In this document: one piece after another, positions 10,002 to 53,465 of the stretch
Layout of the letters: each line of letters begins with the position of its first letter
Position numbering within the stretch: position 1 is the first letter of the stretch
DNA from: Ascidiella aspersa
Taxonomy: Eukaryota
NCBI GenBank assembly: GCA_963924565.1
Contig: OZ004615.1
Span: 6,882,001 to 6,946,000, forward strand
Direction: 5' to 3'
DNA: 64,000 nt
The notes under the pieces: generated by a model
The model's input: the letters and a program-made list of their open reading frames with translations, nothing else
The model's database searches: none
Told to the model about the DNA's origin: nothing
Translations under genes and position numbers: made by a program

Positions 10002-13000
10002 TTAAGACTGGGCAGTGGCTTCTGATTTTGTCATCGCTTCGTTCTCTGCGGACTTGATTGCTTCTATCAGCATCTCCTTCGCCTCGGAGAGCGACCGAAG
10101 CGTGACGTCATCAAACACGTCGCCGGCGTCGTCGACCGTCTCGACGTCCACGTCACCAGCAATGACGTCATCGCTTGTTTCGGCGGCCTGGGGCTCGGCA
10201 GACGAGGAACCGGGATGGTTGCGGTTGGAAACGGAGGTGGGAGAGCCGGGAGTCGATTTTTCAGAAAGAGGAAGACGGAAGTGTGTGTCCTCCTCTTCCT
10301 CCGTGATCTTCTGCTTCTCGTAGTTGACCATCTCCCACTCGATCTGCGCCTTGTTGCTCTTGCGACGGCTGCGCGCGCGGCTTTCAGCCTGCAGAAGTTA
10401 AGGGCGATTTTGAGAAGAGGATTTTCTATACAAGGGGATTCGTTTGGCTGAACGACCTCGGTTGGGGGAACGCTGATTAAATTATCCGATGCATGTGAGT
10501 AGGTGCTCTTGTTAGCTTTCGGTTTTAAAACAGATTAAGGCTGACATCGTCTTATTTTTTTCAGAGTTATACAGTGGTTTCGTGGTTAAAAGCAAGTGGC
10601 TCTAACATAACTCCAACCTAGAAAAATAGCATGTAAAAAACGCCATCTGCCAACCAAAGGTGTTGGACAACGACTCTAATATCGAACGATACGTAATTAG
10701 GAAAAAAAACGTGCTAAACTACGTAAACGCTAAGGACTCAAATATCAACAAATAAGTACTTGAAAAAATCGTGTTAATTTAACAAAACAAATCAAATCGA
10801 ATGCTGAAACCGTATTTACCTGCAAAACGCGCGTGCACTGGTCCACGCCCTGCGGAAAGGTAGTGCTTTCGTCGCGTCCGGCCAGCACCGAGAGGGTGCG
10901 GATGTACGAACAGGCGATTCGCAGGATGGCCAGCTTGGAAAGCTTCTGGTTGCAAGAGTAGCTAGGCACCTGGGCGCGCAGCTCGTCGAACGCAGAGCTG
11001 ATCGTGTGGACGCGGGTTCTTTCCCGGGCGTTGGCGACCAACCGACGTTCCCGGGTCAGATTTTTGTAGCCGGCGGCGCGAGGACTGCCCGAAAGGCCGT
11101 CGCCGCGCATTGGCGAGTCGATGTCTCCCATGTCCAGCGGCATTTCGAGTTGGGTCTGCGGAAGGAAACTGATCCGGTCACCGAAGGAAACAGTGTAAAA
11201 TTGTGTCGCGATATTTTGCTGTTTAAAAGTCGCACCAGGCAATGTTAAATTTACAAATAACGGCCACTGGAAGCTACGGCCTAAGTTACATTCATGACAT
11301 ATGTACAAGAATGACATTCCATTTAATCCCATTTTATGAAAGACAATACGAGAAAAGTAAAAAGAAACAAATAACGCCTGAAAAAAGCTAACATAAGTCG
11401 GTCGAACTCTTTCGGTGTGAAGTTATTCACTCAGGCCAAGTATAGAAATAATGTTGGTGCAAATTTTTTCAAATCAAATAGATACTATGGCCATCCGAAA
11501 ATAATGCTATATCAACGTCCTTTAATTCTCACCTTGATGAATTTCAGAGGCTCTTTTTCGACCTTCTTCAAGACGACGTGATCTTCGGAGTGCTTGGACT
11601 TTTTGGACGGCGTCGATTCTAATAAAAGAATCAAACTTTAAATATGTTTCAAGTTAACCTGGGTAGCAAATGATTGGTAGAGAACCGAAACTGTGATGGG
11701 CGACAATAATACGTAGTTGACGTTAATTAAATTTCTAACTACCTGTTGGTTTATTTTTCCTCTCTTCGCCTCCGCGCCTCTCCGCTTTTCGCTTTTCGGA
11801 GCGGGACGATTTCGGTGTGGTCTTGGATGCCTTGGGGCCCTTCGGTGGGCACGGTTGCTTGGCAGGGGCCGGGACAAGGCGCGCCTCTTCGCGGTTTGCG
11901 GGAAGCGCCAGCGCGGGTCGAACCACGGGAATCGGCCGCTTGACTTCCGTCTGAGTCTTAAGCTGCGTTTTAGCAGCGAGAACAGGCGGGACGTGAAAGT
12001 CAGCCACTGGCGGACTACGTTCGCGCGACTGCTGCTGGCTCTCATGGGAAGGACGCCTGTTGCCCCAACGCTCTCTGGCCTCGTGTTGCTCCCTGGCCTG
12101 CTGGTGCTGCTGCTGTTGGGCGGCTGCGGCAGCCTGGAGAAGCGGGTTGGCAGACATGGCTGGGAAGGCGCCCTGGCCGAGAAACATAGACGAGGTCTGG
12201 AGCTGTTGGAGTGCCTGGATCTGCTCGACTGACATCTGTGGGAACACTGGAAGTCCGAGGCCGGCGCCGGGCAGCATCGACGCCACATTAGCGGCGCCGG
12301 CATGGGCCAGCATCTCGCGCCACAACAGTGGGTTGCTCAGGAATGAGTTGGCACCGAAGAGAAGAGGGTTAGGCGCCGCCGCCGCGGCCATTGGGTTGGT
12401 TTGAGGCATTCCTGGGACAGCGAACGGCATCGACATGCCCTGCATCGCGAAGGCAGGGTTGAAGGCAAAGGGCGAGGAGTAGGGCAGGCCGAAGGGCGAG
12501 TGCGGGGTTTGTCCGGCGTACATCGACATGTAAGGGTTGTTGCTCATTGAGTCGGAATCGGAGGAGGCGTGTCGCGCACGTTTGGCTCCCGACAGCGATC
12601 TTTTCCTCTTCGTGCGATCCTCGGAGGGGGCGGACGACTCGGTTTCGTGGTGGTTACTGCTTGTTTCTGGACCTTTTCTTTTCCGGGAGTTTTTCTTAGC
12701 CCCTGATTCGCGTCGCGACTTGGCAGCGGCCTTGGGAATGTCAGCCACATCAGAAGCATTGTGTTTACCGCAGGTGTTGTTGACGCCGTTGCGGCGGTAA
12801 GCCGTGAATGCGGTTCGCTGTTCAGCGCCTACTTCCACAGGCGCCGTTCTGTCGGCAGATGGAGGCGATACAGCCTGCACACGCGGCTGCTGCGGCTGCG
12901 GCTGGCGTGATTGCTCGTGAAGATGGCGATCACTGTGATTGCAATCACCGCGTGATGATTGCTGCTCCTTGTTCGCTTGTTTGCCATTAGGGAAGTCTCT

Positions 13001-16000
13001 CTGCACTTGCTGCTGCTGCTGCTGCTGATGCTGTGGGTGGCTGGGCTCGGGCTGCTTCCTGGCCGTGGGCAATTCCCACTCGCTGCTGTTTCTGCGCCGC
13101 GTCGAGTCGACTTTGGAACCGTTTTCAGCGCTCTCGGGCGAACTTGGCGCGGAGCCGCGACCTTCGAACGACCCCGGTCGATCAGGAGCGCGCTGGCCCG
13201 GCAGTGGCGCCGCCTGAGCGACGCCCGGCCTCCGCTCGGCTTCGCGGTCCAAGATGGCGCTTCTATATTTGTCGCCGATGTCGACGCGACTGCCAAAGGC
13301 GGCGTACATCTGGCGCAAGATGTCGCTCGAGTCCGGAAGGGATTGAGGCGTTTCGCTTCCGTATTGCTTCTGCTGTTGCTGTTGCTGCTGGTTGCTGAAG
13401 CTCGCTGCGGGTGAATTGGAGCTCTGTCGGCCTTGTAACGATTTTACAGGGCTGGTGGAGTCGCCGGTACTGCGCGCCGCGTCGAATAGCATCCGCTTCT
13501 TTAGGGGATGCGCGTTTTTGGTCGCGTGCGTTTTTTCCGGGCGCTGTTCAACCGGTGATGAGTTCCTGGACAAGCTGCTGCGGCTTAAGTTGTTGTTGTT
13601 CGTGTTTTCTTCGACGCCGTCGCGCTGTTGCGGCTCCGGGCCTTCCCCGGCAGCCATCTGGCCCAGCCTGGCAGCCACCAGGGACGGGTGCTGGTTGTAC
13701 ATCTGCGCCAGGAGGCCCAGTTTGGTCATAGGTGCCATTTCGGGGTGCACTGGCTCCGGGTTACGCGACTCGTCCGACTTAGAACTTGAATCGGTTGAGG
13801 GACTCCTCTGAAAAATACAAACACTAGAGTCAAAAATTATGCTTTAGAATTGTCGAACTTTAGGTTTAAACATATCAGATTTTATTTTTTGACATGACAG
13901 TTTTACGGGGTACAATCAAGACCTATGGCACCAACAAACGCAAATTATCGAACTTCGGGTTTCAACTGATTGCATTCCATGTATTTTACATAACAGTGTT
14001 TTAAAGGGTACAAATCAGGCCTATGGCATCAGCAAGACCAGTTAATATTGGGTCGCTTAATCACGGTGCATAAAACCTAGGTGTAATCTACCGTTTTTGG
14101 TGCCTAACCCTCCATTTGAGCCCCTAATTGGCTAAATGATGGACGCAAGTCACACGTTGAAAAACAAGTTTCAATATCACTCATCTTATCCTCGAATCGC
14201 CAGTAGAAAAACTCCGTGGAAACACGTTCCTATCGGCCGCAAATCGCACCCGAAAATTTCGAACAAGCAGGTCGATGGAGTTGCACCCGGTTTTGCAAGA
14301 TTTTAAAATGCCCAGCAGGCTCCGACGCGGTAATTATCGCCGACAGATGTTTCTCCCATTTCGCCGATACCGCGCCGTTTCTCATTGGAAAGAAGTCCAC
14401 TTAGCACAGAACAGAAGGGCCTGAGCGGTAAGCCTTACTCGGGGGAATAGATACGCACAGGGAAACGATGGGAGAACTGGGAAGAATGGAAGACGGATGC
14501 GGAGTGCTAATTGCCATCAAAAATCCGACGGCCCTTTAATCTATCCCACCTTGATTTATTATATTATTAATAATGTGAAAAGGGGCTTCTAAAAATACCC
14601 TTGACGTCCAGGTAGATTGGCGGACTCCTGTTCCCCAATCTACTATGTCTATTTCGTTTTTCCAGTTTGCTCGACGATAAAAAAGTGGGACGAAAGAGCG
14701 TATGGAAAACACATTTTTACGGGCGGCTTCTTATGCTGAGCAACGGGTCGAAAAACGTCTGGCAAGCAAAAAGGCACGACGGTGCAGCTTGTACGGCCCT
14801 CCATTAATGTGGTCGCGTAGATCGGCTCTCGCCACACGTCCCCTGATAGTTTTCGAGTCGGCAAGCTTCTGGTGCCTAATTGGCGTGTGTATACCCGATG
14901 TTGACATATAGAAGCCCATCGGGAATAAAAGCAGTACAAAGGACACAGCTGTGCGCGGGGAGCTAACGCGCCTGCATCAGCGCCTGGCAGCCGGCGCTTT
15001 GTTGACTGTTGGCGTCGTTTCAGGCCCGCGGTCGGCCTCGGCGAGATATCGATTTTGGGAAAAGTATATAGGTTCCTAATAAAGAATTGTAACGCGCGGA
15101 AAGCAGGTTCAAGATTAATGGCACTATGAATACCCAAGTTTGGCAAAAATCGTTCTGGGTGGGCAATGGCCTGGGATGTTTCATTGAGAGCTATACCAAT
15201 AAACCACAGACGACCCACCTACGTCTTGGTACGATTTGAGTAATAGAGAGAAAATCCGAACGCAAACGTTTGCAAGGCTAAAAACAACAGTAAACGTGTA
15301 TTCTCGATTCTTCGCACAATCTTCCAAAAACGAAAAAAAACAACTCGCGGCATTTATCGATCTGCCTCCTTACCCGATGATGGTTGTGATGACGGTGATG
15401 CTGGTAGGCGGCCACGCGTTCCCCGGCCAGGGCCGACGCGGCCGTCGCGAACCGGTCGTAGGCCTCGATCTCTGGCGAGCTGCTGCTGCTATCTGACAGA
15501 TGCTGCTCCCTGAGGAAATAATAGCAAAATCAATCGCCGCTCGCTCGCTCTAACCCGCAAATCCCCTTTCGAACGTGTCGTCCCACTGCTGCTGCTTCCC
15601 ATTGGCGTCCAAATTCTCCTGGCGCCCCCTGCCCTACCGCCAGCTTGCGCTGCAATCGAAACGCAGGGACGGGCCAGCTTACAAGGCCACATCAAAGATC
15701 GCCTGGCTCGTTTTCCCGACTTAACGTTGGCACCGTTTTTCAGCCAGTGGCTATCCAAAGGCATGCTTATCCCTCTATTTTCCAGGCTTGTCACAACTGG
15801 CACGACAATAAAAAAAAAGACCAGGCCGCATTTTAAATTAACCGCGCAAACTGGCCGAATATGTCGCTGGCAATTGTCTTGGGATCGGACAAGATTTCGA
15901 TCTTGAAGAAGACAGAAGCTGCCATCTGTTACACTCGATGCTACAACCCTTATCATATGCTTTGAGACGTTTGGACTTAGTAACCAAATTGCTGAATTGA

Positions 16001-42193: not shown

Positions 42194-42917
42194 GTTTAAA
42201 AGAATAAACTACAAAGTCATATATTGACTCGTTGACGAAACACGGCCGAATAGACCTACGTTCAATATTTTGGTCTGCAGAACATCAAGAATAACTAATG
42301 AGTTATGAAAATAGTACCAGCCATCATTTTCTTTTTTTACCAGGCTATACCTTGTCATCTCGTTGAATGTATTGAACGATAAACATTATTCTCCGAAAGA
42401 AAAATAGAAAGGACTTTATTCCACTTTCAAACCCAAAAGTACCACCATACTTTTGGGCCTTAAAAGGTTGATTTAGGCCGTTACCGGAACTCACGCTAAA
42501 GTAACTGTTAATGCTTTTATTTCTTGAATACAAAGCTACACTGCAACCACGAAGATAAAACAAATAACAGCAGATATGTTGTTGAACATTTAAACCGAAA
42601 ATTGAAGATAGGCTACAATAATTTCTAACGCACTTGTACAAGGTATTTACATTATCATAACGTAAATATGTCATAATTATTCTTTAAAACAACATTTTCG
42701 ACAACCCAAATTCTAAAAGTGCTTTGTACAACGTCGATTAAAGAAAAGGTATCCACCAAAAATAAAATTAAATAAATATTTACAGGAGATCACCAACCGT
42801 CAAAAAGACCTGTTTAGCAGTTATGAAAAAAAAGTATTCAAAATTTGCAAACTTGTATCAATGAAAAATAAAGTGTACAAACAGCGGAAAGTACACCGTA
42901 CCACTCTGCAAAATACT

Positions 42918-45900
42918 TCAGAGCAGAATGGCAGTTCTCATCTCTTCCCAAAACACTTCCTCGTCTTCCCCAGGACCCGGATACTGCACTACGCTGTAGG
43001 GATGCTTTCTGGCTCTGTACTTGGCGAAGGAACTGCCACCGACCCCGGGCTCGTAGTTGACCATCACACAGCGATCGCGAGTCCCCGAGTACGCCCAGTC
43101 TTCCAGCACTGAGATCACGTACTTGCACTTGCGAGACGCGCCGAAGCCGTTGGACATGATCACGATGGTCTTTCGACTGGCCTGCATTCGCAAAAGCAAC
43201 TGGTTGAGCGGCGTAGGCCCACAGAAGTCGCTCTGGCCGATGACGCCGATCCGCAAGGGCGGGTTGCCGCCTTGCAGCTTTCCTACAAGGCGGTCGTCCA
43301 GCCAGTCAGAGATAGGCGTGTTGCAAGTGTCATAAACAACGAAACCGTGATATGAGTAGGTCGTGTCACCGTTATCAAGATTGCCGTTTTGGGCAGAAGT
43401 TTCCTCTATGGACTCCCTCTCGTGCCGTTTCCTTATGTTGCCGTGAACCATCTTTGCAAAAATTACTTTAAACCACTTGCTGAATCCTACCGATCCCACA
43501 ATAAACAGAACCAAATTGATCGAGAAGAAAATTGTCAGGTTGAGTAACGCCATGTTGGTTTGACAAAAATAAGAGAGACTGTAGCTAAAAATGGTTTCAA
43601 GCTTTCCGTCTGTCGTGTAGCAAACAAGGCATCCACCGAAATATTCGAACATCTGGTTCGGACAGAAAGGTAAGAAACCCTTAACATACAAGTGATCAAA
43701 TGTGCCAGACCGTATCAGCCATCCAAAGTTGTCACTCATGCTGCAATGACATGCCATCACGTTTCCACGTAAATCCAAGAGCGACAACTGGGTTAAAAGC
43801 TGTTTTGAGTATGTAATGGGCGACAAATCCTCCAACTTGTTAAAGGAAATATCAAGATAGTGCAATTTTGGTAAGTTAAACGAACCCGGAGCTACTGATC
43901 GAATCATGTTGTGTGGAATGGAGAGAACTTCGAGTTGAGAACAGCACCATACAAGGCTCGTGTTTAGAGTTTGTATAAAGTTCCGATCGAGAAGAAGTTT
44001 AGTCAAGTTCGGCAACTCGCGAAGTGCGACGTACGGAAACCATTCCAAACCGTTTCGACTGAGGTCTAATAGAGTGATTGATGGGGTGCCTTTAAAAAAA
44101 TTGTCACCAATTCTCCATCTTAAAAGAGCATTTTGCATCGTCAGTGCAACGATCCTTGGAAACATGGCGTACGTATAGTCGTTACGCAATGAATCAAATC
44201 GTGGAAATGCAGTTCCGGATATATCAAGCTTTCTAACATTTTCGAAAGTGATATTGCGCGCTAAATACCATTTCAATAGGTGATAGATCCCACTGTCACC
44301 ACCCCCTATTTTTAAATATGATTGACCCTTTATAGCAGTTAAAAATTCTAAACTCATATCAGGATCATAGAAAGATCCAAAGATGGCAATGTCGACACTT
44401 GATAAACGTTTGAATGCCAACGGAAATATCATTCGAATTGGATTATAACTCAAGTTAACCGATCTTAGATTACAAAGCGACGAAAATGTGTTGTTTCCAA
44501 TGTAACTTATTTTGTTGTTACTGAGATCGAGAAAAGTAACAAATGTGCTTGCGCCAAAGGTCCGATTTTCCAATCTAGCTATGGAGTTTCTATGCAATGT
44601 GATTAAGTTGTTGTAGTTTCCACTAACTGATAAATCAGTACCGTTACCTTTGCGTTTAACTTCAATTCGACTTTCACTGTAATAGATAGACGAAATTTCG
44701 TTATAAGACAAATCAATGCTTTCCAAATGGATCAATTCATCTAAAGCTCTCATGTCGAACTGTGTAATACCACTACCTCCCAAATAAAGGTTTTTGAAAT
44801 AAGGGAGGTTGGCCAGAGCTACAAAACTTTGGGCGGTGACTTTCCTGTATCGAATTGCATACATGGCGAATTTATCCACATCTTTTTCGTCATATGTCAT
44901 TCCAAGACTCAACGTAAGAAGTGCTGGGAAGCTCTGATACGCACCTCCCAGCATTAGTTCTTCATTTTCGGGTGGTGTGGGGTAATAAGAGAAATTTTGA
45001 CAACGATTATTTGCTGCAAGGTAAATTTTTTTTAGATATGGTAGACTTGGCACCATCGTCGGGTTTAACGTTAGAAATTTAAAGCAATTGAAAGAAAGAT
45101 ACAAAGATCTAAGTGCTTTATTTTTCGCAAGGAAGTTTTTCGGCAGGCTAGTTAGCATGTTAGCAGATAAATCAAGTGCTTCCAAACGTTTTAAATTGTC
45201 CAATGAGCCCGACTGGATTTCCAAAGGTAGAAAATCGTAACTGGATGTCCAGCCTAAACCTAAATAAACGAGGTTCGGTGATACGATGAAATCATCTCTG
45301 TCTAATTGATGTATGGGATTTCCTGTCAAGACAATACACTCCATGCTTTCGACGAAGAGAAATTTCGGCAACGATTTTAAGTTGTTAAAGGAAATGTCGA
45401 GGTAACGGGGTTTGCTGTACTTAAAAGGTTTTCCAGTGACGATAAACTTCCTTGGGCACAGGCTGACAGGCTTCGTTTGTACGCAGTTCGATTGTAACAA
45501 AACTACGTCAAGACTCGTAAGAACGGAAAGCTGCTGTTCGCTAATTGGTACCATGAATGTGTTGCTCAGCACCAGCACTTCGAGGGAAGGTGGCAAGTTT
45601 TCTGGCAACGTAAGCATGGAGTTGTGATTAAGGTCGAGATATTTAAGCCTGGTCAAACGGGAAAAAGCAAGGGGGTGAAATTCCATATGCCCGGCACATT
45701 GCGGTTGGGCAATCTTTGTTTGGGTTTGGCAGTTTACACTCAAGTCCAGGGCTATGAGCGAACGATACCTTGACAAGTCATCGGCGCCGACGTACCTTAT
45801 CAGGTTGCCGTAAAATACCAGTATTTCAACGTTGGGATCGAGAAGCTTCGGTATTTGTTGAATTCCTCGTTGGTGGCAACTAATAAGAGGAGATGGATAT

Positions 45901-46094
45901 TTTGCCCAGTTTGGAAATTTGATTTGTTCGAATGCCTTCTTCGCGGCAAACCCAATTGCATGTTGAAATGAGCGGTTGGTCAGAGGGCTGCATTGATATT
46001 TGCCAAACTGAATCGTTTTCGATTTGTTGTCACTCGCAATAGGCGATATAAAACAATTGATAAATATACACAAAAAAACTAAGATCTGGTTCAT
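42918..46094 (-). CDS. Toll-like receptor, single-exon CDS, about 1058 aa, TLR7/8/9-like ectodomain
   Basis: The uninterrupted ORF's first ATG at 46094 begins a signal peptide (MNQILVFLCIFINCFISPIAS). It has about 26 LRRs, an LRRCT (LDLRGNVMACHC), a transmembrane helix (LLNLTIFFSINLVLFIVGSVGF) and a TIR domain (YHGFVVYD...SRKTIVIMS...FWEEMRTAILL). A candidate 5'UTR intron lies at 46639-46111 (GTAAGT...TTTATACAG). Confidence 0.95.
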   Translation of the reverse strand: MNQILVFLCIFINCFISPIASDNKSKTIQFGKYQCSPLTNRSFQHAIGFAAKKAFEQIKFPNWAKYPSPLISCHQRGIQQIPKLLDPNVEILVFYGNLIRYVGADDLSRYRSLIALDLSVNCQTQTKIAQPQCAGHMEFHPLAFSRLTRLKYLDLNHNSMLTLPENLPPSLEVLVLSNTFMVPISEQQLSVLTSLDVVLLQSNCVQTKPVSLCPRKFIVTGKPFKYSKPRYLDISFNNLKSLPKFLFVESMECIVLTGNPIHQLDRDDFIVSPNLVYLGLGWTSSYDFLPLEIQSGSLDNLKRLEALDLSANMLTSLPKNFLAKNKALRSLYLSFNCFKFLTLNPTMVPSLPYLKKIYLAANNRCQNFSYYPTPPENEELMLGGAYQSFPALLTLSLGMTYDEKDVDKFAMYAIRYRKVTAQSFVALANLPYFKNLYLGGSGITQFDMRALDELIHLESIDLSYNEISSIYYSESRIEVKRKGNGTDLSVSGNYNNLITLHRNSIARLENRTFGASTFVTFLDLSNNKISYIGNNTFSSLCNLRSVNLSYNPIRMIFPLAFKRLSSVDIAIFGSFYDPDMSLEFLTAIKGQSYLKIGGGDSGIYHLLKWYLARNITFENVRKLDISGTAFPRFDSLRNDYTYAMFPRIVALTMQNALLRWRIGDNFFKGTPSITLLDLSRNGLEWFPYVALRELPNLTKLLLDRNFIQTLNTSLVWCCSQLEVLSIPHNMIRSVAPGSFNLPKLHYLDISFNKLEDLSPITYSKQLLTQLSLLDLRGNVMACHCSMSDNFGWLIRSGTFDHLYVKGFLPFCPNQMFEYFGGCLVCYTTDGKLETIFSYSLSYFCQTNMALLNLTIFFSINLVLFIVGSVGFSKWFKVIFAKMVHGNIRKRHERESIEETSAQNGNLDNGDTTYSYHGFVVYDTCNTPISDWLDDRLVGKLQGGNPPLRIGVIGQSDFCGPTPLNQLLLRMQASRKTIVIMSNGFGASRKCKYVISVLEDWAYSGTRDRCVMVNYEPGVGGSSFAKYRARKHPYSVVQYPGPGEDEEVFWEEMRTAILL

Positions 46095-47397
46095 TTTTAA
46101 ACAACGCCACCTGTATAAATGAGATAACAACAATAACTTTGTTTACAACTCCAGGTTTTAAACTGCTAAAGCAGATTGGCGGCATTGTTTGCATAAAAAT
46201 GCATTTCAGCCAAAAGTAAATTTAGTTTTAATAGTCTTTATCAAAGTTTTAGAATTTTTCAAAACTTATGAGAAGACCCTTTACAATGGTTAAACCTTTA
46301 TCTAGTCGCGGGCCAAACCTCAGAAAGGTCTTTGCGGAAAGTTAAATTTAAACTGTGTAGACTTTACGCATCTTATTGTAATTATAAGAACCGCAACGAC
46401 TGTCAATCAGAGATTCCGGTATGCTATAGCAAAAAGGAAGCGAAATTTGCCTATTTCGGTCACGTTTTAGCGACACAAAGAGATGCGAGGTCATGTACAG
46501 CACGTTTTGAAACTAACCTGTGAATAACACCGCCAGTCCGCCACGTATTCAACGAATACACTTGCGAAAACGACTATACTATATAAGCCTAATAAGTCCA
46601 CCATTGCGAAATAAGGAACGAAGTATACTTTACACTTACAGTGTTCATGTAACTCGATTGCTTATCTAATCTCAAACCTAAGCTTGAAATACAACTCAAA
46701 AAATTCTGATAAACTTCTAAGGTTAACCCATAACCATCAACGGACAAAAGCTACAGAGTCGGAGTCGCACTCGGGACCCGAGGAAGGCTACGTTAAGACT
46801 ATACTCGAATCCTGTCTGTCGTGTAGCCTACCTGCGCAGCAACAAAAAACGACGAGGCCTCAAATTGTAAATGTGAAACATTTAGTGAAATAATTCCAAC
46901 TAAGTATTTTGGGTGTTTTAAAGGAGTTATGATCCCTTCATGAGTAAATTGCTGTATAGTGTATATCCATTATCCACCCTATTTTAGTTGCGTGAATGGG
47001 TGGAATGCAGACTGTCGAGTCAAAGCCGGGTTTGGAACTCGAATAACATCATCATCGAAATTTGACACATCTCGAAATAAGGCCAAAATAGGAACATTCC
47101 AAAAGTCAATATAGTCGGAATAATATCTGAATCAGAATAAAACTTAAACGGCCAGAACAAGATTTAAACATCCTTTTACTTAACCCAAACCCCTACCCTA
47201 ACTTGATAACTATAACTAAACCAATAGTTTCACCCCTAACCCATATACCAACCCCAGCCATTACCCACCCCAAACATTAAACGGAGCCAAAAAGACCAAT
47301 GACAGAACGACCGAGGCGAGAAATAGAAGCCGTATATGCTTAGGTTGGACGTAGATAAATGAAAAATATTCGTTAAAATTAAAAAAGTGAGATATGA

Positions 47398-48519
47398 TTA
47401 CTAACACTTGACCCACCTGAACCCAAACGCTAACCCGAATCCAAACCCAAATAATGTGCGTTAATTTAATAATTATCCGAACGCTGGAAAAAAAAGCCCA
47501 AACTCGGGTGGGCATAGCCTATATAGTTCATCGTCCATTGTATAAAGGATTTTTACGTCACAAATTGAGGTATTGGGGCCTGAAGCGTTATAACTTATAA
47601 TTTGAGGCAAGCGGATTTAATTACAAGTCTCATTAAACTAATTTGCCTCGGCAATCAACCTCGCTATTGCTTCAATAAGTTTTGGTGTTGTCTGATTACA
47701 ATTCCACACAGTTTGTGTTGGCTATTATGGGCAAACCGGCTAATGCCGGCAAGCACAACCACTCGCTGTCTTGACACGACTAGACTGGATTGGTTCAACA
47801 GCAGAACAACTTGTAAATTGATCCTGAGAACTGGACATTTTTATTTTGTAAGCAATCCTTTTTATACACAAAGCAGCAATGACACGGCAAATTGTTACAT
47901 TATCTAATAGTAATTTCGTCACACGGGTGTTGGCTTATCGCCTTTCTTTCTCAACTTATCTCCTACAAGGAAGTTAGAATCTGTTCATATTAGTACACGA
48001 AAGCGGCTTCTCTAACTGTAAACACAATTTCGAATCATTGTTTTGGGATGCGGCTAATGTGCCAATTCTCAAAGCGGCGATTTAAGGTCGCACATTCGCT
48101 GACAATATAAGGAAGGATATGCGTCAGTTTTGTTATTCGTCATCTGTGAACAAGTGGCCGAACTGTTTCGCAAGGCACTGGCAATTTACCGGAAGTTTTC
48201 ACTAAAAACGCACACAGTAGCAATTCGTCAACATTACATTTTCGAGTTTAGACACATAAAGCTCTTTGATAAATAGATATATTATTACAATTTTGATAAA
48301 TATACAACAGGATGTTTTTGGTAAGGATGCGTTATGACAATTTTGATAATTAGACAAGAAATAATAAAGGGGCGTATGTTTTTGTTGTTCGTTAATTACT
48401 TAAAACGATTAATTAAACATGTAAAAATGGCCACTGCCACCACAAATTATTAAATTAACGCACATTATTTGGGTTAGGGTGCTGGTTAACGTTTGGGTTC
48501 GGGTTGGTCAAGTATTATT
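47398..48519. repeat. Inverted pair of approx. 75-bp AACCC-rich repeats (47398-47474 and 48446-48519); third partial copy at about 58082-58128
   Basis: ACTTGACC..AACCCAAACG..AACCCAAATAATGTGCGTTAATTTAATAATT and its reverse complement about 1 kb downstream. Confidence 0.75.
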
Positions 48520-50099: not shown

Positions 50100-51725
50100 A
50101 TGGGTAGGCCCAAGAGAAAAACCACACCACTGGCAACTCCACCTGCAGCCAAAAAAGCACAGAAACGAAAAGCACAGGACGTAAAAGTTAAACCAGACCC
50201 GGATGCAGATAAACCAAGTACTTCTGCAGACTCTGACAAGGATCAGAAAGTTGTCACTTTTACAGGCACAATACCGGTCGACAGTGAATGCCCATTAAAT
50301 CCCAAAGATTATCATGTGCATATTGCAGGCACCGATATTTACAATGCAATGTTAAACCAAACTAACATTGGTGCAAACAACAACAAGTACTACATCTTGC
50401 AGGTTATAAAGCACAACAACAAAAGTGAATTCTTCTCGTGGTTTAGATGGGGCAGAGTTGGTAAAACTGCAGGCACACAACTAACGCCTAACCAAGAACA
50501 TAAAGCCATCCAACTCTTTCGAAAAAAGTTTCAAAATAAAACAGGTTTCGTTTGGGTCTTCAGAAGTGGGTTTACAAAAACAAAGGGTAAATATGACATG
50601 GTTGAAATTGACTATGGCCAAGACGATACCAGTTCAACTGAGGTTGACGGTCCTAAAAAGCCAAAAATACAAGTAGAATCAAAACTGGACAAGCGGATTC
50701 AGGATGTCATGAGTTTGATCTTTGACCAAAATGAATGGGAAGCTTCCATTAAGGAAATGAAGTTTGACATTAAAAAGGCACCCCTGGGAAAACTTACCAA
50801 AGCACAGATAACAGCAGGTTACGAGTCATTGAAAAGAATTGAATCATGTATCCAGAAGAAAAAACAGACGGGGACCGAATTGGCTGATGCTTGCAGCGAA
50901 TTCTACACAAGGGTCCCACATGACTTTGGTATGAAAGTTCCACCCCTGATTAAGACACCACAAGATATCAAAGAAAAGCTGCAGCTCCTTGAGGCACTGG
51001 AAGACCTTCAAATTGCCATCAGCGTTGTTGATGAAAAGCAAGATGAAACTAAAAACAAGCTGGATGGATATTATGATTCGCTGCAATGTGATTTGGCTCC
51101 ATTGGAGAAAACAGACAGTGAATTTAAGGAGATTGCAAAGTATGTGAAAAACACACATGCCAGTACCCACAATCAGTACGAATTAGCGGTACAGGAAGTT
51201 TTTCGGGTCAACCGTGAGAGTGACACCAAAAAATTTAAAAAAGATCTGGGCTCCAGGATGTTGCTGTGGCATGGGTCTCGTCTTACCAACTGGTGCGGCA
51301 TCTTGAAGCAAGGTTTGCGAATTGCACCACCAGAAGCTCCAGTGACAGGCTACATGTTCGGAAAGGGAGTCTACTTTGCAGACATGGTTTCAAAGTCTGC
51401 CAACTATTGCTTCACCAATGCCAGGCAGCCAATCGGTTTTTTACTTGTGTGCGAAGTAGCACTTGGTTCTATGAACGAGAAGACATACTCTGATTATAAT
51501 GCCGATAAGTTGCCAAAAGGCAAGCATAGTACAAAGGGCTGTGGCAGAACTGCACCTGATCCCAAGAGTTATGTAAAGTTGGAAGATGGGGCTGTAATTC
51601 CCTCTGGAAAACCGAAACCAGTTAAACTCAAAGATGGAGGGTATCTGATGTACAACGAATATATTGTCTACAACACGGCTCAGATTAAACCAAGATACCT
51701 GGTAAAAACCAAGTTCAGGTACTAA
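50100..51725 (+). CDS. PARP2: Poly(ADP-ribose) polymerase, PARP2-like (basic N-terminus, WGR, regulatory and catalytic domains), intronless, 541 aa
   Basis: WGR domain (YNAMLNQTNIGANNNKYY...WFRWGRVG), helical regulatory domain (PLGKLTKAQITAGYESL, FYTRVPHDFGMK) and catalytic domain with the H-Y-E triad (LLWHGSR, GYMFGKGVYFADMVSKSANYC, YNEYIVY). There are no zinc fingers or BRCT, so it is not PARP1. The APPEAPVTGYMFGKG loop argues for PARP2 over PARP3. Confidence 0.9.
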   Translation: MGRPKRKTTPLATPPAAKKAQKRKAQDVKVKPDPDADKPSTSADSDKDQKVVTFTGTIPVDSECPLNPKDYHVHIAGTDIYNAMLNQTNIGANNNKYYILQVIKHNNKSEFFSWFRWGRVGKTAGTQLTPNQEHKAIQLFRKKFQNKTGFVWVFRSGFTKTKGKYDMVEIDYGQDDTSSTEVDGPKKPKIQVESKLDKRIQDVMSLIFDQNEWEASIKEMKFDIKKAPLGKLTKAQITAGYESLKRIESCIQKKKQTGTELADACSEFYTRVPHDFGMKVPPLIKTPQDIKEKLQLLEALEDLQIAISVVDEKQDETKNKLDGYYDSLQCDLAPLEKTDSEFKEIAKYVKNTHASTHNQYELAVQEVFRVNRESDTKKFKKDLGSRMLLWHGSRLTNWCGILKQGLRIAPPEAPVTGYMFGKGVYFADMVSKSANYCFTNARQPIGFLLVCEVALGSMNEKTYSDYNADKLPKGKHSTKGCGRTAPDPKSYVKLEDGAVIPSGKPKPVKLKDGGYLMYNEYIVYNTAQIKPRYLVKTKFRY

Positions 51726-52724: not shown

Positions 52725-53465
52725 CTAAACAATACTGTCAATTAGGGAATCACGCATAGTTGTTTGAACCGAATTAGGATTTTGATTGTCACCTAATTTA
52801 AATACGCTCTCTACAACTGAAAGTTCAGTACTGGTGGTGTCGAGTCCACAAAACGCACACCAGTCATTAACAACCATGCCAGCGCCAATGACTTCGCTAC
52901 CCCGGTTTACGGTCCCTGCAACCAGGGGTACTTGCAGGAGTGAAGAGAGTTCGTCCAGGTCTTCTATGCTTGTTTTGGGATGAACCAGTCCTCCTTGGTT
53001 ACTGAAACAGCAATAACTGCCAACCAAAACTTGATCGGTTACAGTTTGCCGGAAGACCTCTACCTTCAAAACGTCGGCCAAGATTTCTTCAGTCTCCTGA
53101 TCTAAATCAGGATGAACGAGAGCAACGTAATCGTTGCATGACACCACATTGCCAAGCGCTGAGAGCCGCTCTTCTAATCTTTGAATCTTTACCGAGTCCG
53201 GAAGACAGTTGCGGATATGCTGTAGCTCTTGGTCTGTTGTAGAATTTGGTACCAAAAGGCCGTGTCGGTTTCCAACGCACATTCTTCCAATAATCCTGCA
53301 TTCGGCAATGGAAGCGTGCACCACTGGTATGGTGTCTGCAAGTTCTGATTCAAAGACACTGTAAAAATTTTCAGAGCCCCCAATGGCCACCAGGCAGTAT
53401 GAATTTGTCAGCTTGGCAAATACTCCGATTTCATTGTTGTTTTCAAATTGTACCCTCACCGCCAT
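52725..53465 (-). CDS. EIF6: Eukaryotic translation initiation factor 6, intronless CDS, 246 aa
   Basis: [39 protein letters not shown]...RLSALGNV...[26 protein letters not shown]...MRDSLIDS is a full-length, highly conserved eIF6. Confidence 0.98.

What the first reader, a model, noticed from the sequence alone, without database searches (positions are those of the whole stretch)
42918..46094. TLR with a vertebrate TLR7/8/9-type nucleic-acid-sensor architecture in an apparently invertebrate genome
Seen: a hand count gives 26 LRRs. Cys-bearing insertions follow LRR2 (LDLSVNCQTQTKIAQPQC), LRR5 (LLQSNCVQTKPVSLCP) and LRR11 (YLAANNRC), with a Cys-free insert at LRR8. There is a non-LRR linker between LRR14 and LRR15, a single C-terminal cysteine cluster, a length of about 1058 aa and a one-exon CDS. 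Established: 26 LRRs, protruding inserts at LRR2/5/8/11, a Z-loop between LRR14 and LRR15 and an essentially single-exon CDS characterise the endosomal TLR7/8/9 family, which is usually treated as vertebrate-specific. Inference: this may be a pro-ortholog, implying the endosomal nucleic-acid-sensor design predates vertebrates. It could also be the ortholog of an already described ascidian TLR.
Basis: partly seen in the sequence, partly recalled or inferred. Interest (0 to 1): 0.8.

Follow-up and report, generated by a model that had tools for sequence, protein, structure and literature searches.

The report
Sea-squirt TLR7/8/9-like immune receptor
This is an intact sea-squirt gene for a Toll-like receptor built like the vertebrate nucleic-acid sensors TLR7/8/9, one of a previously undescribed tunicate gene family, which suggests that this receptor design is older than vertebrates, although its ligand and cellular location are unknown.

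Summary
Minus strand 42918-46094 is an uninterrupted 1058-codon ORF. It encodes a signal peptide, 26 LRRs, one C-terminal cysteine cluster, a TM helix and a divergent but complete TIR domain. The source genome is an ascidian (308 Mb; neighbouring eIF6 is 91% identical to Phallusia).

The ectodomain is closest to vertebrate TLR7/8/9 by every measure I could run:
- Sequence profile against solved structures: TLR7 488, TLR8 353 and TLR9 332 bits, all collinear, against TLR3 about 250 and TLR13 242.
- Fold: Z 36-37 at rmsd 2.7-3.0 Å over about 700 residues, against TLR13 25.6 and TLR3 19.5.
- Shared N-C...C inserts in LRR2 and LRR5, and an extra loop exactly between LRR14 and LRR15.

The gene has at least 8 intact paralogs in its own genome. 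About 45 relatives exist in other ascidians, and RefSeq auto-names the Clavelina ones "toll-like receptor 7/8".

Several features differ from TLR7/8/9. The Z-loop is short here (about 14 extra residues against about 44). The LRR8 cysteine cluster is absent. The TLR7/8/9 pocket residues F408 and D555 are Gly and Arg. The BB-loop proline is Cys. No UNC93B1 ortholog was shown.

My tree had too few outgroups to prove sistership. The scan flagged paralogs of this gene before, on other DNA. Verdict: new member of a known kind.

The parts
42918..46094 (-). Complete single-exon CDS (1058 codons plus stop) of the TLR7/8/9-like receptor
   Evidence: The ORF listing shows no internal stop. The protein aligns collinearly with human TLR7, residues 70-1056 against 48-1033.
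46029..46094 (-). Signal peptide (residues 1-22)
   Evidence: This is a hydrophobic N-terminal helix, residues 2-19 in the model. A hydrophobic N-terminal segment of this kind is present in all paralogs.
45831..46028 (-). N-terminal cap / LRRNT (residues 23-88) with family-invariant Y33 Q34 C35 W63 C73
   Evidence: The invariant residues come from alignment A1. The model is confident from residue 40 onward.
44682..45830 (-). LRR1-LRR14 (residues 89-471)
   Evidence: The model has 14 concave-face strands, at residues 91, 115, 152, 173, 197, 231, 253, 277, 306, 330, 356, 394, 435 and 459.
45687..45734 (-). LRR2 insert NCQTQTKIAQPQCAGH (N-C...C type)
   Evidence: The insert lies in the same columns as the TLR7/TLR9 LRR2 insert. 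The unit is 32 aa long, against a vertebrate median of 31.
45447..45488 (-). LRR5 insert NCVQTKPVSLCPRK (N-C...C type)
   Evidence: C204 and C213 are invariant across 65 tunicate and vertebrate sequences or nearly so. The unit is 30 aa long, against 28 in vertebrates.
45225..45251 (-). LRR8 short Cys-free insert WTSSYDFLP
   Evidence: The unit is 29 aa long, against 41 in vertebrates, which carry the NCPRCxxxxxPCxPC cluster at this place.
44961..45011 (-). LRR11 insert NNRCQNFSYYPTPPENE
   Evidence: The unit is 30 aa long, against 22 in vertebrates. R364, C365, Y371 and P372 are invariant among the paralogs.
44835..44900 (-). LRR12 insert (tunicate-specific, helix plus strand)
   Evidence: The unit is 44 aa long, against 30 in vertebrates. 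The model places helix 406-412 and strand 415-419 here.
44613..44681 (-). Short Z-loop-like linker YSESRIEVKRKGNGTDLSVSGNY between LRR14 and LRR15
   Evidence: pLDDT is below 50 at residues 480-493. The linker lies at the same position as the vertebrate Z-loop. The Asn-to-Asn spacing is 38 residues here, against a tunicate median of 55 and a vertebrate median of 68.
43752..44612 (-). LRR15-LRR26 (residues 495-781)
   Evidence: The model has 12 strands, at residues 497, 521, 545, 568, 592, 620, 650, 675, 699, 723, 746 and 772.
43560..43751 (-). LRRCT, the single C-terminal cysteine cluster (C782 C784 C811 C822 C825 C844)
   Evidence: These cysteines are invariant in alignments A1, A3 and A4.
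43485..43559 (-). Transmembrane helix (residues 846-870)
   Evidence: The model shows a helix at residues 846-870.
42921..43358 (-). Divergent TIR domain (residues 913-1058)
   Evidence: A profile of the paralog C-termini matches the TLR2 TIR at E = 7.6e-14 and the TLR7 TIR at 5e-10, over the whole domain. The model has the five-strand, five-helix TIR fold, with Z 16-17 to solved TIR domains. Pfam TIR hits 6 of 7 paralogs but not this copy.
43218..43238 (-). BB-loop GQSDFCG, with Cys in place of the canonical proline
   Evidence: In this alignment column, 26 of 31 vertebrate sequences have Pro and 32 of 34 tunicate sequences have Cys.

Best explanation
The locus is a functional, single-coding-exon gene of an ascidian. 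It encodes a type-I membrane Toll-like receptor of the TLR7/8/9 structural class. The parts, in order, are a signal peptide, an N-cap, 14 LRRs, a short flexible linker at the Z-loop position, 12 LRRs, an LRRCT, a TM helix and a TIR domain.

The gene is one of at least 9 intact paralogs in this genome. It belongs to a tunicate-wide family with three old subclades that is the nearest relative of vertebrate TLR7/8/9. This is most simply explained by descent from one gene in the common ancestor of tunicates and vertebrates.

Inferred mechanism: the ring-shaped ectodomain binds a ligand as a dimer, which brings two TIR domains together to recruit a TIR adaptor and activate NF-kB-type signalling.

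What is shown: the gene is intact, and its architecture, fold and family relations are as described. What is inferred: signalling. What is open: the ligand (nucleic acid or not), whether the linker is cleaved, and whether the protein sits in endosomes.
For: - The ORF is intact here and in two other assemblies.
- dN/dS against paralogs is 0.12-0.19, and the TIR of recent duplicates gives 0.28.
- The source is an ascidian: eIF6 in the window is 91% identical to Phallusia, 89% to Clavelina and 86% to Styela.
- Paralogs lie on C2, C3, C4 and C6, all as single ORFs.
- A profile search of 1.84 billion representatives found about 45 collinear relatives at E 1e-260 to 1e-100. The named ones are all from Clavelina lepadiformis and are labelled "toll-like receptor 7/8" or "TIR domain-containing". 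Vertebrate TLR7/8/9 come next, with lamprey TLR7 at 2.8e-59.
- Nine multi-stretch hits of about 1000 aa in that range have no TIR.
- The PDB ranking by family profile is TLR7 488, TLR8 353 and TLR9 332 bits, each as one collinear stretch. TLR3 ectodomain scores about 250, TLR13 242, and generic LRR proteins 230 or less (the same order appears).
- Fold: all of the Foldseek top 50 are TLR7/8/9. VIA-align gives Z 36.7 and 36.6 at rmsd 3.0 and 2.7 Å over 685-703 residues for TLR9 and TLR7, against TLR13 25.6 and TLR3 19.5.
- The N-C...C inserts in LRR2 and LRR5 and the extra loop between LRR14 and LRR15 are shared with TLR7/8/9. Relatives have loops of up to 52 extra residues.
- The TIR fold is confirmed.
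Against: - The tree could not show a tunicate+TLR7/8/9 clade. The two available outgroups attach between the two groups, and holding the groups together costs 4.8 lnL (AU p = 0.18).
- No sequences of TLR3, TLR5, the TLR11-13/21-22 group or amphioxus TLRs could be fetched.
- F408 and D555, which are conserved in TLR7/8/9 and needed for agonist response (PMC4718629), are Gly and Arg here. They are rarely conserved in the tunicate family.
- The LRR8 Cys cluster is absent and the Z-loop is only about 14 extra residues in this copy.
- The BB-loop proline is Cys.
- The family's TIR profile scores the TLR2 TIR above the TLR7 TIR.
- Expression is not shown. The sampled 6% of an RNA run gave essentially no reads. 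A run of unknown type covers only the gene body at low depth.
Confidence: 0.7

Rival explanations
1. It is a tunicate-specific single-cysteine-cluster TLR. Its likeness to TLR7/8/9 would then reflect retention of a general long-TLR ground plan or convergence, and its true nearest vertebrate relatives would be another family (TLR11/13/21/22, TLR3 or TLR5).
For: - The tree does not recover a tunicate+TLR7/8/9 clade with the outgroups available.
- The LRR8 Cys cluster and the pocket residues are not shared with TLR7/8/9.
- The TIR profile scores the TLR2 TIR highest.
- A published tree puts the Ciona gene annotated as TLR7 next to TLR5 (PMC12816324).
- A published statement says TLR11-13/21/22 are close to TLR7/8/9 (PMC13012124).
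Against: - The family profile scores TLR7/8/9 ectodomains 80-160 bits above TLR3 and TLR13, and only the TLR7/8/9 matches are collinear end to end.
- Whole-ectodomain superposition gives Z 36-37 at about 3 Å, against 25.6 at 4.6 Å for TLR13 and 19.5 at 8.6 Å for TLR3.
- The LRR number is the same (26), the loop lies between the same two repeats, and the LRR2 and LRR5 N-C...C inserts are the same.
Confidence: 0.17
2. It is a non-signalling LRR membrane protein (a decoy or adhesion-type receptor) whose cytoplasmic tail is no longer a working TIR. This is what was argued for the Ciona genes annotated as TLR3, TLR6 and TLR7.
For: - Pfam finds no TIR in this copy, and finds one in only 15 of 34 family members.
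- The BB-loop proline, whose mutation in TLR2 and TLR4 blocks signalling (established knowledge), is Cys in 32 of 34 members.
- Box 1 reads YHGFVVY rather than YDAF(I/V)xY.
Against: - The tail is the best conserved part of the paralogs (76% mean column identity against 70% overall).
- The tail is under purifying selection.
- The tail aligns over the full TIR length to the TLR2, TLR7, TLR1 and TLR6 TIRs.
- The tail folds with the five-strand, five-helix topology and matches solved TIR domains at Z 16-17 and rmsd 2.2-2.8 Å.
- TLR3 also lacks the BB-loop proline and still signals (established knowledge).
Confidence: 0.1
3. It is a contaminant, a horizontally acquired vertebrate gene, or a dead copy.
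For: None found. The only weak point is that expression is not demonstrated.
Against: - The gene lies in a 64-kb window with ascidian-type eIF6 and other genes on a chromosome-scale contig.
- Nine paralogs lie on five contigs.
- The gene is only 21-25% identical to any vertebrate TLR.
- The family has three old subclades across ascidians.
- The ORF is intact in three assemblies.
Confidence: 0.02

Closest known systems
Vertebrate TLR7 subfamily (TLR7, TLR8, TLR9)
   Same: - 26 LRRs in a closed ring, LRRNT and a single LRRCT, TM and TIR.
- Length of about 1050 aa, and the CDS in one exon.
- N-C...C inserts after the Asn of LRR2 and LRR5.
- An unstructured loop exactly between LRR14 and LRR15.
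- A whole-ectodomain fold match (Z 36-37, rmsd about 3 Å).
- The best sequence-profile match among all solved structures.
   Different: - Only 21-25% identity.
- The Z-loop is about 14 extra residues here, against about 44 in vertebrates (other tunicate members have up to 52).
- There is no Cys-rich LRR8 insert.
- There are extra inserts in LRR11 and LRR12.
- The pocket residues F408 and D555 are Gly and Arg.
- The BB-loop reads GxDDxCG instead of ERDWxPG.
- The N-terminus has about 35 extra residues.
- The ligand, cleavage, UNC93B1 dependence and localisation are all unknown.
Clavelina lepadiformis RefSeq proteins auto-named 'toll-like receptor 7' (XP_076813901.1, XP_076803988.1, XP_076821479.1), 'toll-like receptor 8' (XP_076823641.1) and LOC143465303 (XP_076819643.1)
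   Same: They belong to the same tunicate family, are full-length and collinear, and are 26-36% identical to the window protein. XP_076819643.1 lies in the same subclade as the window gene.
   Different: They come from a different ascidian order. Their Z-loop-like inserts are longer (49-74 residues from Asn to Asn). Clavelina has members in all three subclades, whereas this genome has only subclade A.
Ciona robusta '*CiTLR7' (NP_001231972.1, KY21.Chr1.44), re-classified in 2026 as not a canonical TLR (PMC12816324)
   Same: It is an ascidian LRR + TM protein that the database names TLR7. Standard domain tools do not detect its TIR, just as Pfam fails on the window copy. [quoted passage not shown]
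   Different: I could not obtain its sequence through the tools, so membership in this family is untested. The authors place it next to TLR5 and report no TIR at all. It did not appear among the named hits of either protein search.
Ciona TLR1 and TLR2 (Sasaki et al. 2009, as summarised in PMC12816324)
   Same: They are ascidian TLRs with LRR, TM and TIR, and CiTLR1 is single-exon.
   Different: They have only 7-13 LRRs and no TLR7-type inserts or Z-loop. They group with invertebrate deuterostome TLRs or with TLR2. They are not orthologs of this gene.
Amphioxus homologs of TLR7/8/9 reported in the Asymmetron genome paper (PMC13012124)
   Same: They are a published claim that relatives of TLR7/8/9 exist in an invertebrate chordate.
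   Different: They come from a different subphylum. That study found only four urochordate TLRs, all in the other major TLR group, so the tunicate family described here was not seen. I did not compare sequences.

Membership tests
Toll-like receptor (LRR + TM + TIR) | Extracellular LRR solenoid with LRRNT/LRRCT caps | tested here: met
   Pfam LRR_8 scores 4.7e-48. The model shows 26 LRRs and an LRRCT.
Toll-like receptor (LRR + TM + TIR) | Single transmembrane helix | tested here: met
   The model shows a helix at residues 846-870.
Toll-like receptor (LRR + TM + TIR) | Cytoplasmic TIR domain | tested here: met
   Pfam finds no hit for this copy. A paralog profile matches the TLR2 TIR at 7.6e-14 over the full length. 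Six of 7 paralogs hit PF01582. The fold matches TIR structures at Z 16-17.
Toll-like receptor (LRR + TM + TIR) | Canonical BB-loop (RDxxPG) used for adaptor recruitment | tested here: not met
   The loop reads GQSDFCG. The proline column holds Cys in 32 of 34 tunicate members.
TLR7 subfamily (TLR7/8/9) | 26 LRRs forming a closed ring | tested here: met
   The model has 26 strands. It superposes on TLR7 and TLR9 over 685-723 residues at rmsd 2.7-3.0 Å.
TLR7 subfamily (TLR7/8/9) | Z-loop of about 30-45 residues between LRR14 and LRR15 | tested here: inconclusive
   The position is met. The length in this copy is only about 14 extra residues (spacing 38, against a vertebrate median of 68). Other family members reach a spacing of 76. 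Cleavage is not testable with these tools.
TLR7 subfamily (TLR7/8/9) | Cys-bearing inserts in LRR2 and LRR5 | tested here: met
   The inserts lie in the same columns and are of the same length class, and the Cys residues are conserved.
TLR7 subfamily (TLR7/8/9) | Cys-rich insert in LRR8 | tested here: not met
   The unit is 29 aa with no Cys, against 41 aa with four Cys in all 31 vertebrate sequences.
TLR7 subfamily (TLR7/8/9) | Conserved ligand-pocket residues F408 (LRR13) and D555 (LRR17), human TLR7 numbering | tested here: not met
   In those columns vertebrates have F in 31 of 31 and D in 29 of 31 sequences. The window protein has G442 and R554. The role of these residues is taken from PMC4718629.
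TLR7 subfamily (TLR7/8/9) | Groups with TLR7/8/9 in a phylogeny to the exclusion of other TLR families | tested here: inconclusive
   The tunicate clade and the vertebrate clade are each supported at 100/100. With only two distant outgroups, the joint clade was not recovered and not rejected (AU p = 0.18). Profile and fold rankings favour TLR7/8/9.
TLR7 subfamily (TLR7/8/9) | Coding sequence essentially in one exon | tested here: met
   The ORF is uninterrupted in this gene and in 8 paralogs.
TLR7 subfamily (TLR7/8/9) | Endosomal residence and dependence on UNC93B1 | not testable with these tools
   UNC-93 family genes exist in the genome. The best one is UNC93A-like and matches UNC93B1 only at E = 0.0025. 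Another ORF matches at E = 0.08. One exon of a multi-exon gene gave no hit. No UNC93B1 ortholog was shown, and absence was not proven.
TLR7 subfamily (TLR7/8/9) | Recognition of ssRNA, nucleosides or CpG DNA | not testable with these tools
   This needs a binding or reporter assay.

The most novel reading that the evidence does not exclude
Tunicates carry an old, diversified sister family of TLR7/8/9, with three subclades and up to ten copies per genome. TLR censuses have missed it because its TIR escapes domain models. On this reading the family is a working endosomal nucleic-acid-sensing system that predates vertebrates. It would have a different ligand pocket and a Cys-type BB-loop that may couple to a different adaptor.
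Probability: 0.3. Interest if true: 0.8.

Novelty: new member of a known kind. Interest (0 to 1): 0.6.

Why it matters
TLR7/8/9 are the main endosomal RNA and DNA sensors of vertebrates and important drug targets. Reviews and surveys treat them as a vertebrate family and describe tunicates as having only a few atypical TLRs (PMC6946030, PMC13012124, PMC12816324).

A tunicate family with the same 26-LRR ring, the same LRR2/LRR5 inserts and a loop at the Z-loop site would move the origin of this design at least to the tunicate-vertebrate ancestor.

It would also show that domain-based censuses (LRR + TM + Pfam TIR) undercount tunicate TLRs, and it offers a reason to re-examine the Ciona gene dismissed as "*CiTLR7".

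The natural variation in Z-loop length (30-76) and the replaced pocket and BB-loop residues give a comparative handle on which features of TLR7/8/9 are essential.

Tried and rejected
1. The word-index protein search with the whole protein found only vertebrate TLR7/8/9 and generic LRR proteins and missed all tunicate relatives. The same search restricted to the TIR region found nothing. That blank is a limit of the tool, not evidence.

2. The full HMMER search was needed and did find the family.

4. I could not fetch sequences of other TLR families, so the decisive phylogeny could not be built. Trees with mixture models did not finish, so LG+G4 was used.

5. On UNC93B1, Pfam UNC-93 hits were followed up against the solved UNC93B1 structure. 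The results were inconclusive.

6. On expression, the one read-laying run gave almost no reads from the sampled 6% of the RNA run. A run of unknown type covers only the gene body.

7. One literature search returned nothing relevant.

8. Rfam found nothing in the window.

9. Contamination, HGT and pseudogene readings were considered and rejected (see the rivals).

10. Orthology to Ciona TLR1/2 was considered and rejected because of their LRR number.


Full report
**The gene.** On the minus strand an ORF runs from the ATG at 46094 to the stop at 42918-42920. It is 1058 codons long with no interruption.

Contigs of two other sequencing runs of the same species span the whole CDS. They differ at seven sites (3 synonymous, 4 non-synonymous) and have no indel or stop.

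The sequence 15 nt upstream of the ATG reads ...tttatacag|G. It looks like a splice or trans-splice acceptor, so a non-coding leader exon is possible. I could not test this.

Expression is not demonstrated. The sampled 6% of a raw RNA run gave almost nothing. A run of unknown type covers only 42788-46191, the gene body, at low depth.

**The organism.** The window also holds a single-exon eIF6 gene, a single-exon PARP (WGR + regulatory + catalytic domains) and a bHLH ORF. The best named matches of eIF6 are Phallusia mammillata (91%), Clavelina lepadiformis (89%) and Styela clava (86%). The window lies on contig 9 of a 308.6-Mb, 75-contig genome. The source is therefore an ascidian, not a vertebrate. 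The locus is not a contaminant.

**Architecture.** An AlphaFold2 model built on a 65-sequence alignment has mean pLDDT 88.5 and pTM 0.73. Its parts are:
- a signal helix and an N-terminal cap
- 14 LRR strands
- a disordered stretch at 480-493
- 12 more LRR strands
- an LRRCT and a TM helix (846-870)
- a five-strand, five-helix TIR domain (913-1058)

I measured repeat units in an alignment with 31 vertebrate TLR7/8/9 sequences:

| Feature | Window | Vertebrate TLR7/8/9 | Note |
|---|---|---|---|
| LRR2 unit | 32 aa | 31 aa | N-C...C insert in the same columns |
| LRR5 unit | 30 aa | 28 aa | N-C...C insert in the same columns |
| LRR8 unit | 29 aa | 41 aa | window has a five-residue, Cys-free insert; vertebrates have a four-Cys insert |
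| LRR11 unit | 30 aa | 22 aa | larger in the tunicate family |
| LRR12 unit | 44 aa | 30 aa | larger in the tunicate family |
| Asn(LRR14) to Asn(LRR15) | 38 | median 68 | a plain LRR is 24 |

That last spacing is 34-41 in this genome's paralogs and 30-76 (median 55) across tunicate relatives. The loop therefore sits at exactly the Z-loop site and is a family trait, but it is reduced in this copy.

**The TIR domain.**
- Pfam reports only LRR families for this protein.
- A profile of seven paralog C-termini matches the whole TIR of TLR2 (7.6e-14), TLR7 (5e-10), TLR1, TLR6 and TLR10.
- Six of seven paralog tails hit PF01582, but only 15 of 34 family members do.
- The modelled domain matches solved TIRs at Z 16-17 and rmsd 2.2-2.8 Å.
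- The tail is the most conserved part of the paralogs.
- The BB-loop proline is replaced by Cys in 32 of 34 family members.

The divergence of this TIR probably explains why TLR surveys based on domain detection have missed the family.

**Relatives.**
- The genome holds 8 further intact single-ORF copies, 41-56% identical to the window protein. There are tandem groups on C2 and C6 (two CDS are identical) and singles on C3 and C4. One broken copy lies on C2.
- A profile of these copies, searched with HMMER against 1.84 billion cluster representatives, gave about 45 collinear relatives at E 1e-260 to 1e-100.
- Thirty hits were looked up. Twenty-nine are family members: those that carry names are all from Clavelina lepadiformis, where RefSeq calls them "toll-like receptor 7", "toll-like receptor 8" or "uncharacterized". 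The rest of the 29 are unnamed ENA predictions. The thirtieth (P0274) proved to be a fused vertebrate TLR7 model from Scleropages.
- Below them come vertebrate TLR7/8/9 (lamprey TLR7 at 2.8e-59) and giant or very regular LRR proteins. Nine hits of about 1000 aa in that range have no TIR.

**Which TLR family is it closest to?**

Sequence, using a profile of 34 tunicate members against all PDB chains:

| Target | Bits | Match pattern |
|---|---|---|
| Full-length TLR7 | 488 | one stretch, 59-1064 against 45-1034 |
| TLR7 ectodomain | 403 | collinear, whole ectodomain |
| TLR8 | 353 | collinear, whole ectodomain |
| TLR9 | 332 | collinear, whole ectodomain |
| TLR3 ectodomain | about 250 | fragmented matches |
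| TLR13 | 242 | fragmented matches |
| LRRC15 | 230 | fragmented matches |
| TLR5 | 186 | a single partial match, in the C-terminal part only |
| Drosophila Toll | 168 | fragmented matches |

The single sequence and the nine-paralog profile give the same order.

Fold:
- All 50 listed Foldseek matches are TLR7/8/9 ectodomains, with TM 0.77-0.84 normalised to the target.
- An independent all-against-representatives alignment gives TLR9 Z 36.7 (rmsd 3.0 Å over 685 residues) and TLR7 Z 36.6 (2.7 Å over 703 residues).
- The same search gives TLR13 Z 25.6 (4.6 Å), TLR4 20.2, TLR3 19.5 (8.6 Å) and TLR2/6 18.2.

**Trees.** With LG+G4, the tunicate sequences form one clade and the vertebrate TLR7/8/9 sequences another (100/100 each in the careful run). 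The tunicate clade has three old subclades. Clavelina has members in all three, and this genome only in one.

The only non-family TLRs I could obtain were a sea-star TLR and one unnamed TIR protein. They attach between the two clades. A tunicate+vertebrate clade is 4.8 lnL worse and is not rejected (AU p = 0.18).

So the trees exclude nesting of the tunicate genes inside TLR7, TLR8 or TLR9. They do not by themselves prove sistership. That inference rests on the profile and fold rankings and on the shared inserts.

**Function.**
- Human TLR7 residues F408 and D555 are conserved in TLR7/8/9 and are required for agonist responses (PMC4718629).
- In my alignment those columns hold F in 31 of 31 and D in 29 of 31 vertebrate sequences. 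They hold G and R in the window protein and mostly G and R/H/K in the family. The nucleoside pocket is therefore not conserved, and the ligand cannot be inferred.
- UNC-93 family genes exist in the genome. The best, a single-exon gene on C3, is UNC93A-like and matches UNC93B1 at only E = 0.0025. A 313-aa ORF on C1 matches at E = 0.08. One exon of a multi-exon C1 gene, searched alone without joining exons, gave no hit.
- dN/dS is 0.12-0.19 between the window gene and its paralogs. Among recent duplicates it is about 0.6 overall, 0.28 in the TIR and 0.8-1.9 in the C-terminal half of the ectodomain. This pattern is usual for immune receptors.

**Literature.**
- Surveys state that tunicates underwent TLR reduction (PMC6946030).
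- The four urochordate TLRs found in a 2026 analysis lie outside the vertebrate-like group. The same paper reports close amphioxus homologs of TLR7/8/9 (PMC13012124).
- A 2026 re-analysis of Ciona rejects the gene annotated as TLR7 as a TLR because no TIR was detected, and places it near TLR5 (PMC12816324). I could not test whether that gene belongs to this family.
- No paper in the searchable library links a Z-loop or a TLR7-type ectodomain with tunicates.
- Earlier first-stage notes of this scan flagged paralogs of this gene on other contigs.

**Verdict.** This is a real ascidian TLR of the TLR7/8/9 structural class and a member of an undescribed tunicate family. RefSeq already labels the Clavelina members "toll-like receptor 7" or "toll-like receptor 8". 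Pro-orthology is likely but not proven. A nucleic-acid-sensing, endosomal function is possible but unsupported by the pocket residues.

Noticed in passing
window 50100-51725 (+): An intronless 541-aa ORF encodes a complete PARP1/2-type enzyme, with WGR, PARP regulatory and PARP catalytic domains (Pfam E 1e-18 to 1e-74).
   Followed up: partly
window 52725-53465 (-): An intronless 246-aa eIF6 gene is 91% identical to the Phallusia mammillata protein. I used it to place the source genome among ascidians.
   Followed up: yes
window 10745-13750: A 195-aa ORF with a bHLH domain (10745-11332, minus strand) lies next to a block at 11.7-13.75 kb that is GC-rich (58.6% GC against about 40% elsewhere). 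The block has long ORFs on both strands (up to 671 aa) and no Pfam match. It may be the N-terminal part of the same gene, or a CpG-rich or low-complexity region.
   Followed up: no
window 46232-46415 and 47336-47500: In the DNA contigs of two runs, depth rises from about 64-123 to about 640-900 at 46232-46415. It rises to 35,000-69,000 at 47336-47500. This indicates a moderately repeated and a very highly repeated element just upstream of the TLR gene.
   Followed up: no
window 46095-46125 (-): The sequence ttgttatctcatttatacag|GTGGCG lies 15 nt upstream of the ATG and looks like a splice or SL trans-splice acceptor. If so, the gene would have a non-coding leader exon, as vertebrate TLR7/8/9 genes do.
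   Followed up: no
G000 C6:11.83-11.91 Mb (L004, L006, L007, L008) and C2:14.09-14.12 Mb (L002, L003, L009): The paralogs form tandem arrays with very recent segmental duplication. The L007 and L008 CDS are identical, and L002 and L003 differ at dS 0.01. The copy at C2:14094215-14097598 is interrupted: its longest ORF stops at 879 aa and the remainder matches separately.
   Followed up: partly
proteins P0266, P0267, P0268, P0273, P0275 (tunicate subclade C): Five predicted relatives from unnamed ENA assemblies all end at the same point inside the TIR (...FCxxPxC(R/K)). This suggests a conserved intron there in that subclade rather than truly truncated TIRs. It could also be why some ascidian genes are reported as lacking a complete TIR.
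   Followed up: no
G000 C3:7167053-7168258 (L013): An intronless 485-aa UNC-93 family (MFS) gene gives a very strong Pfam UNC-93 match (371 bits) but only a marginal match to UNC93B1. It is likely UNC93A-like.
   Followed up: partly
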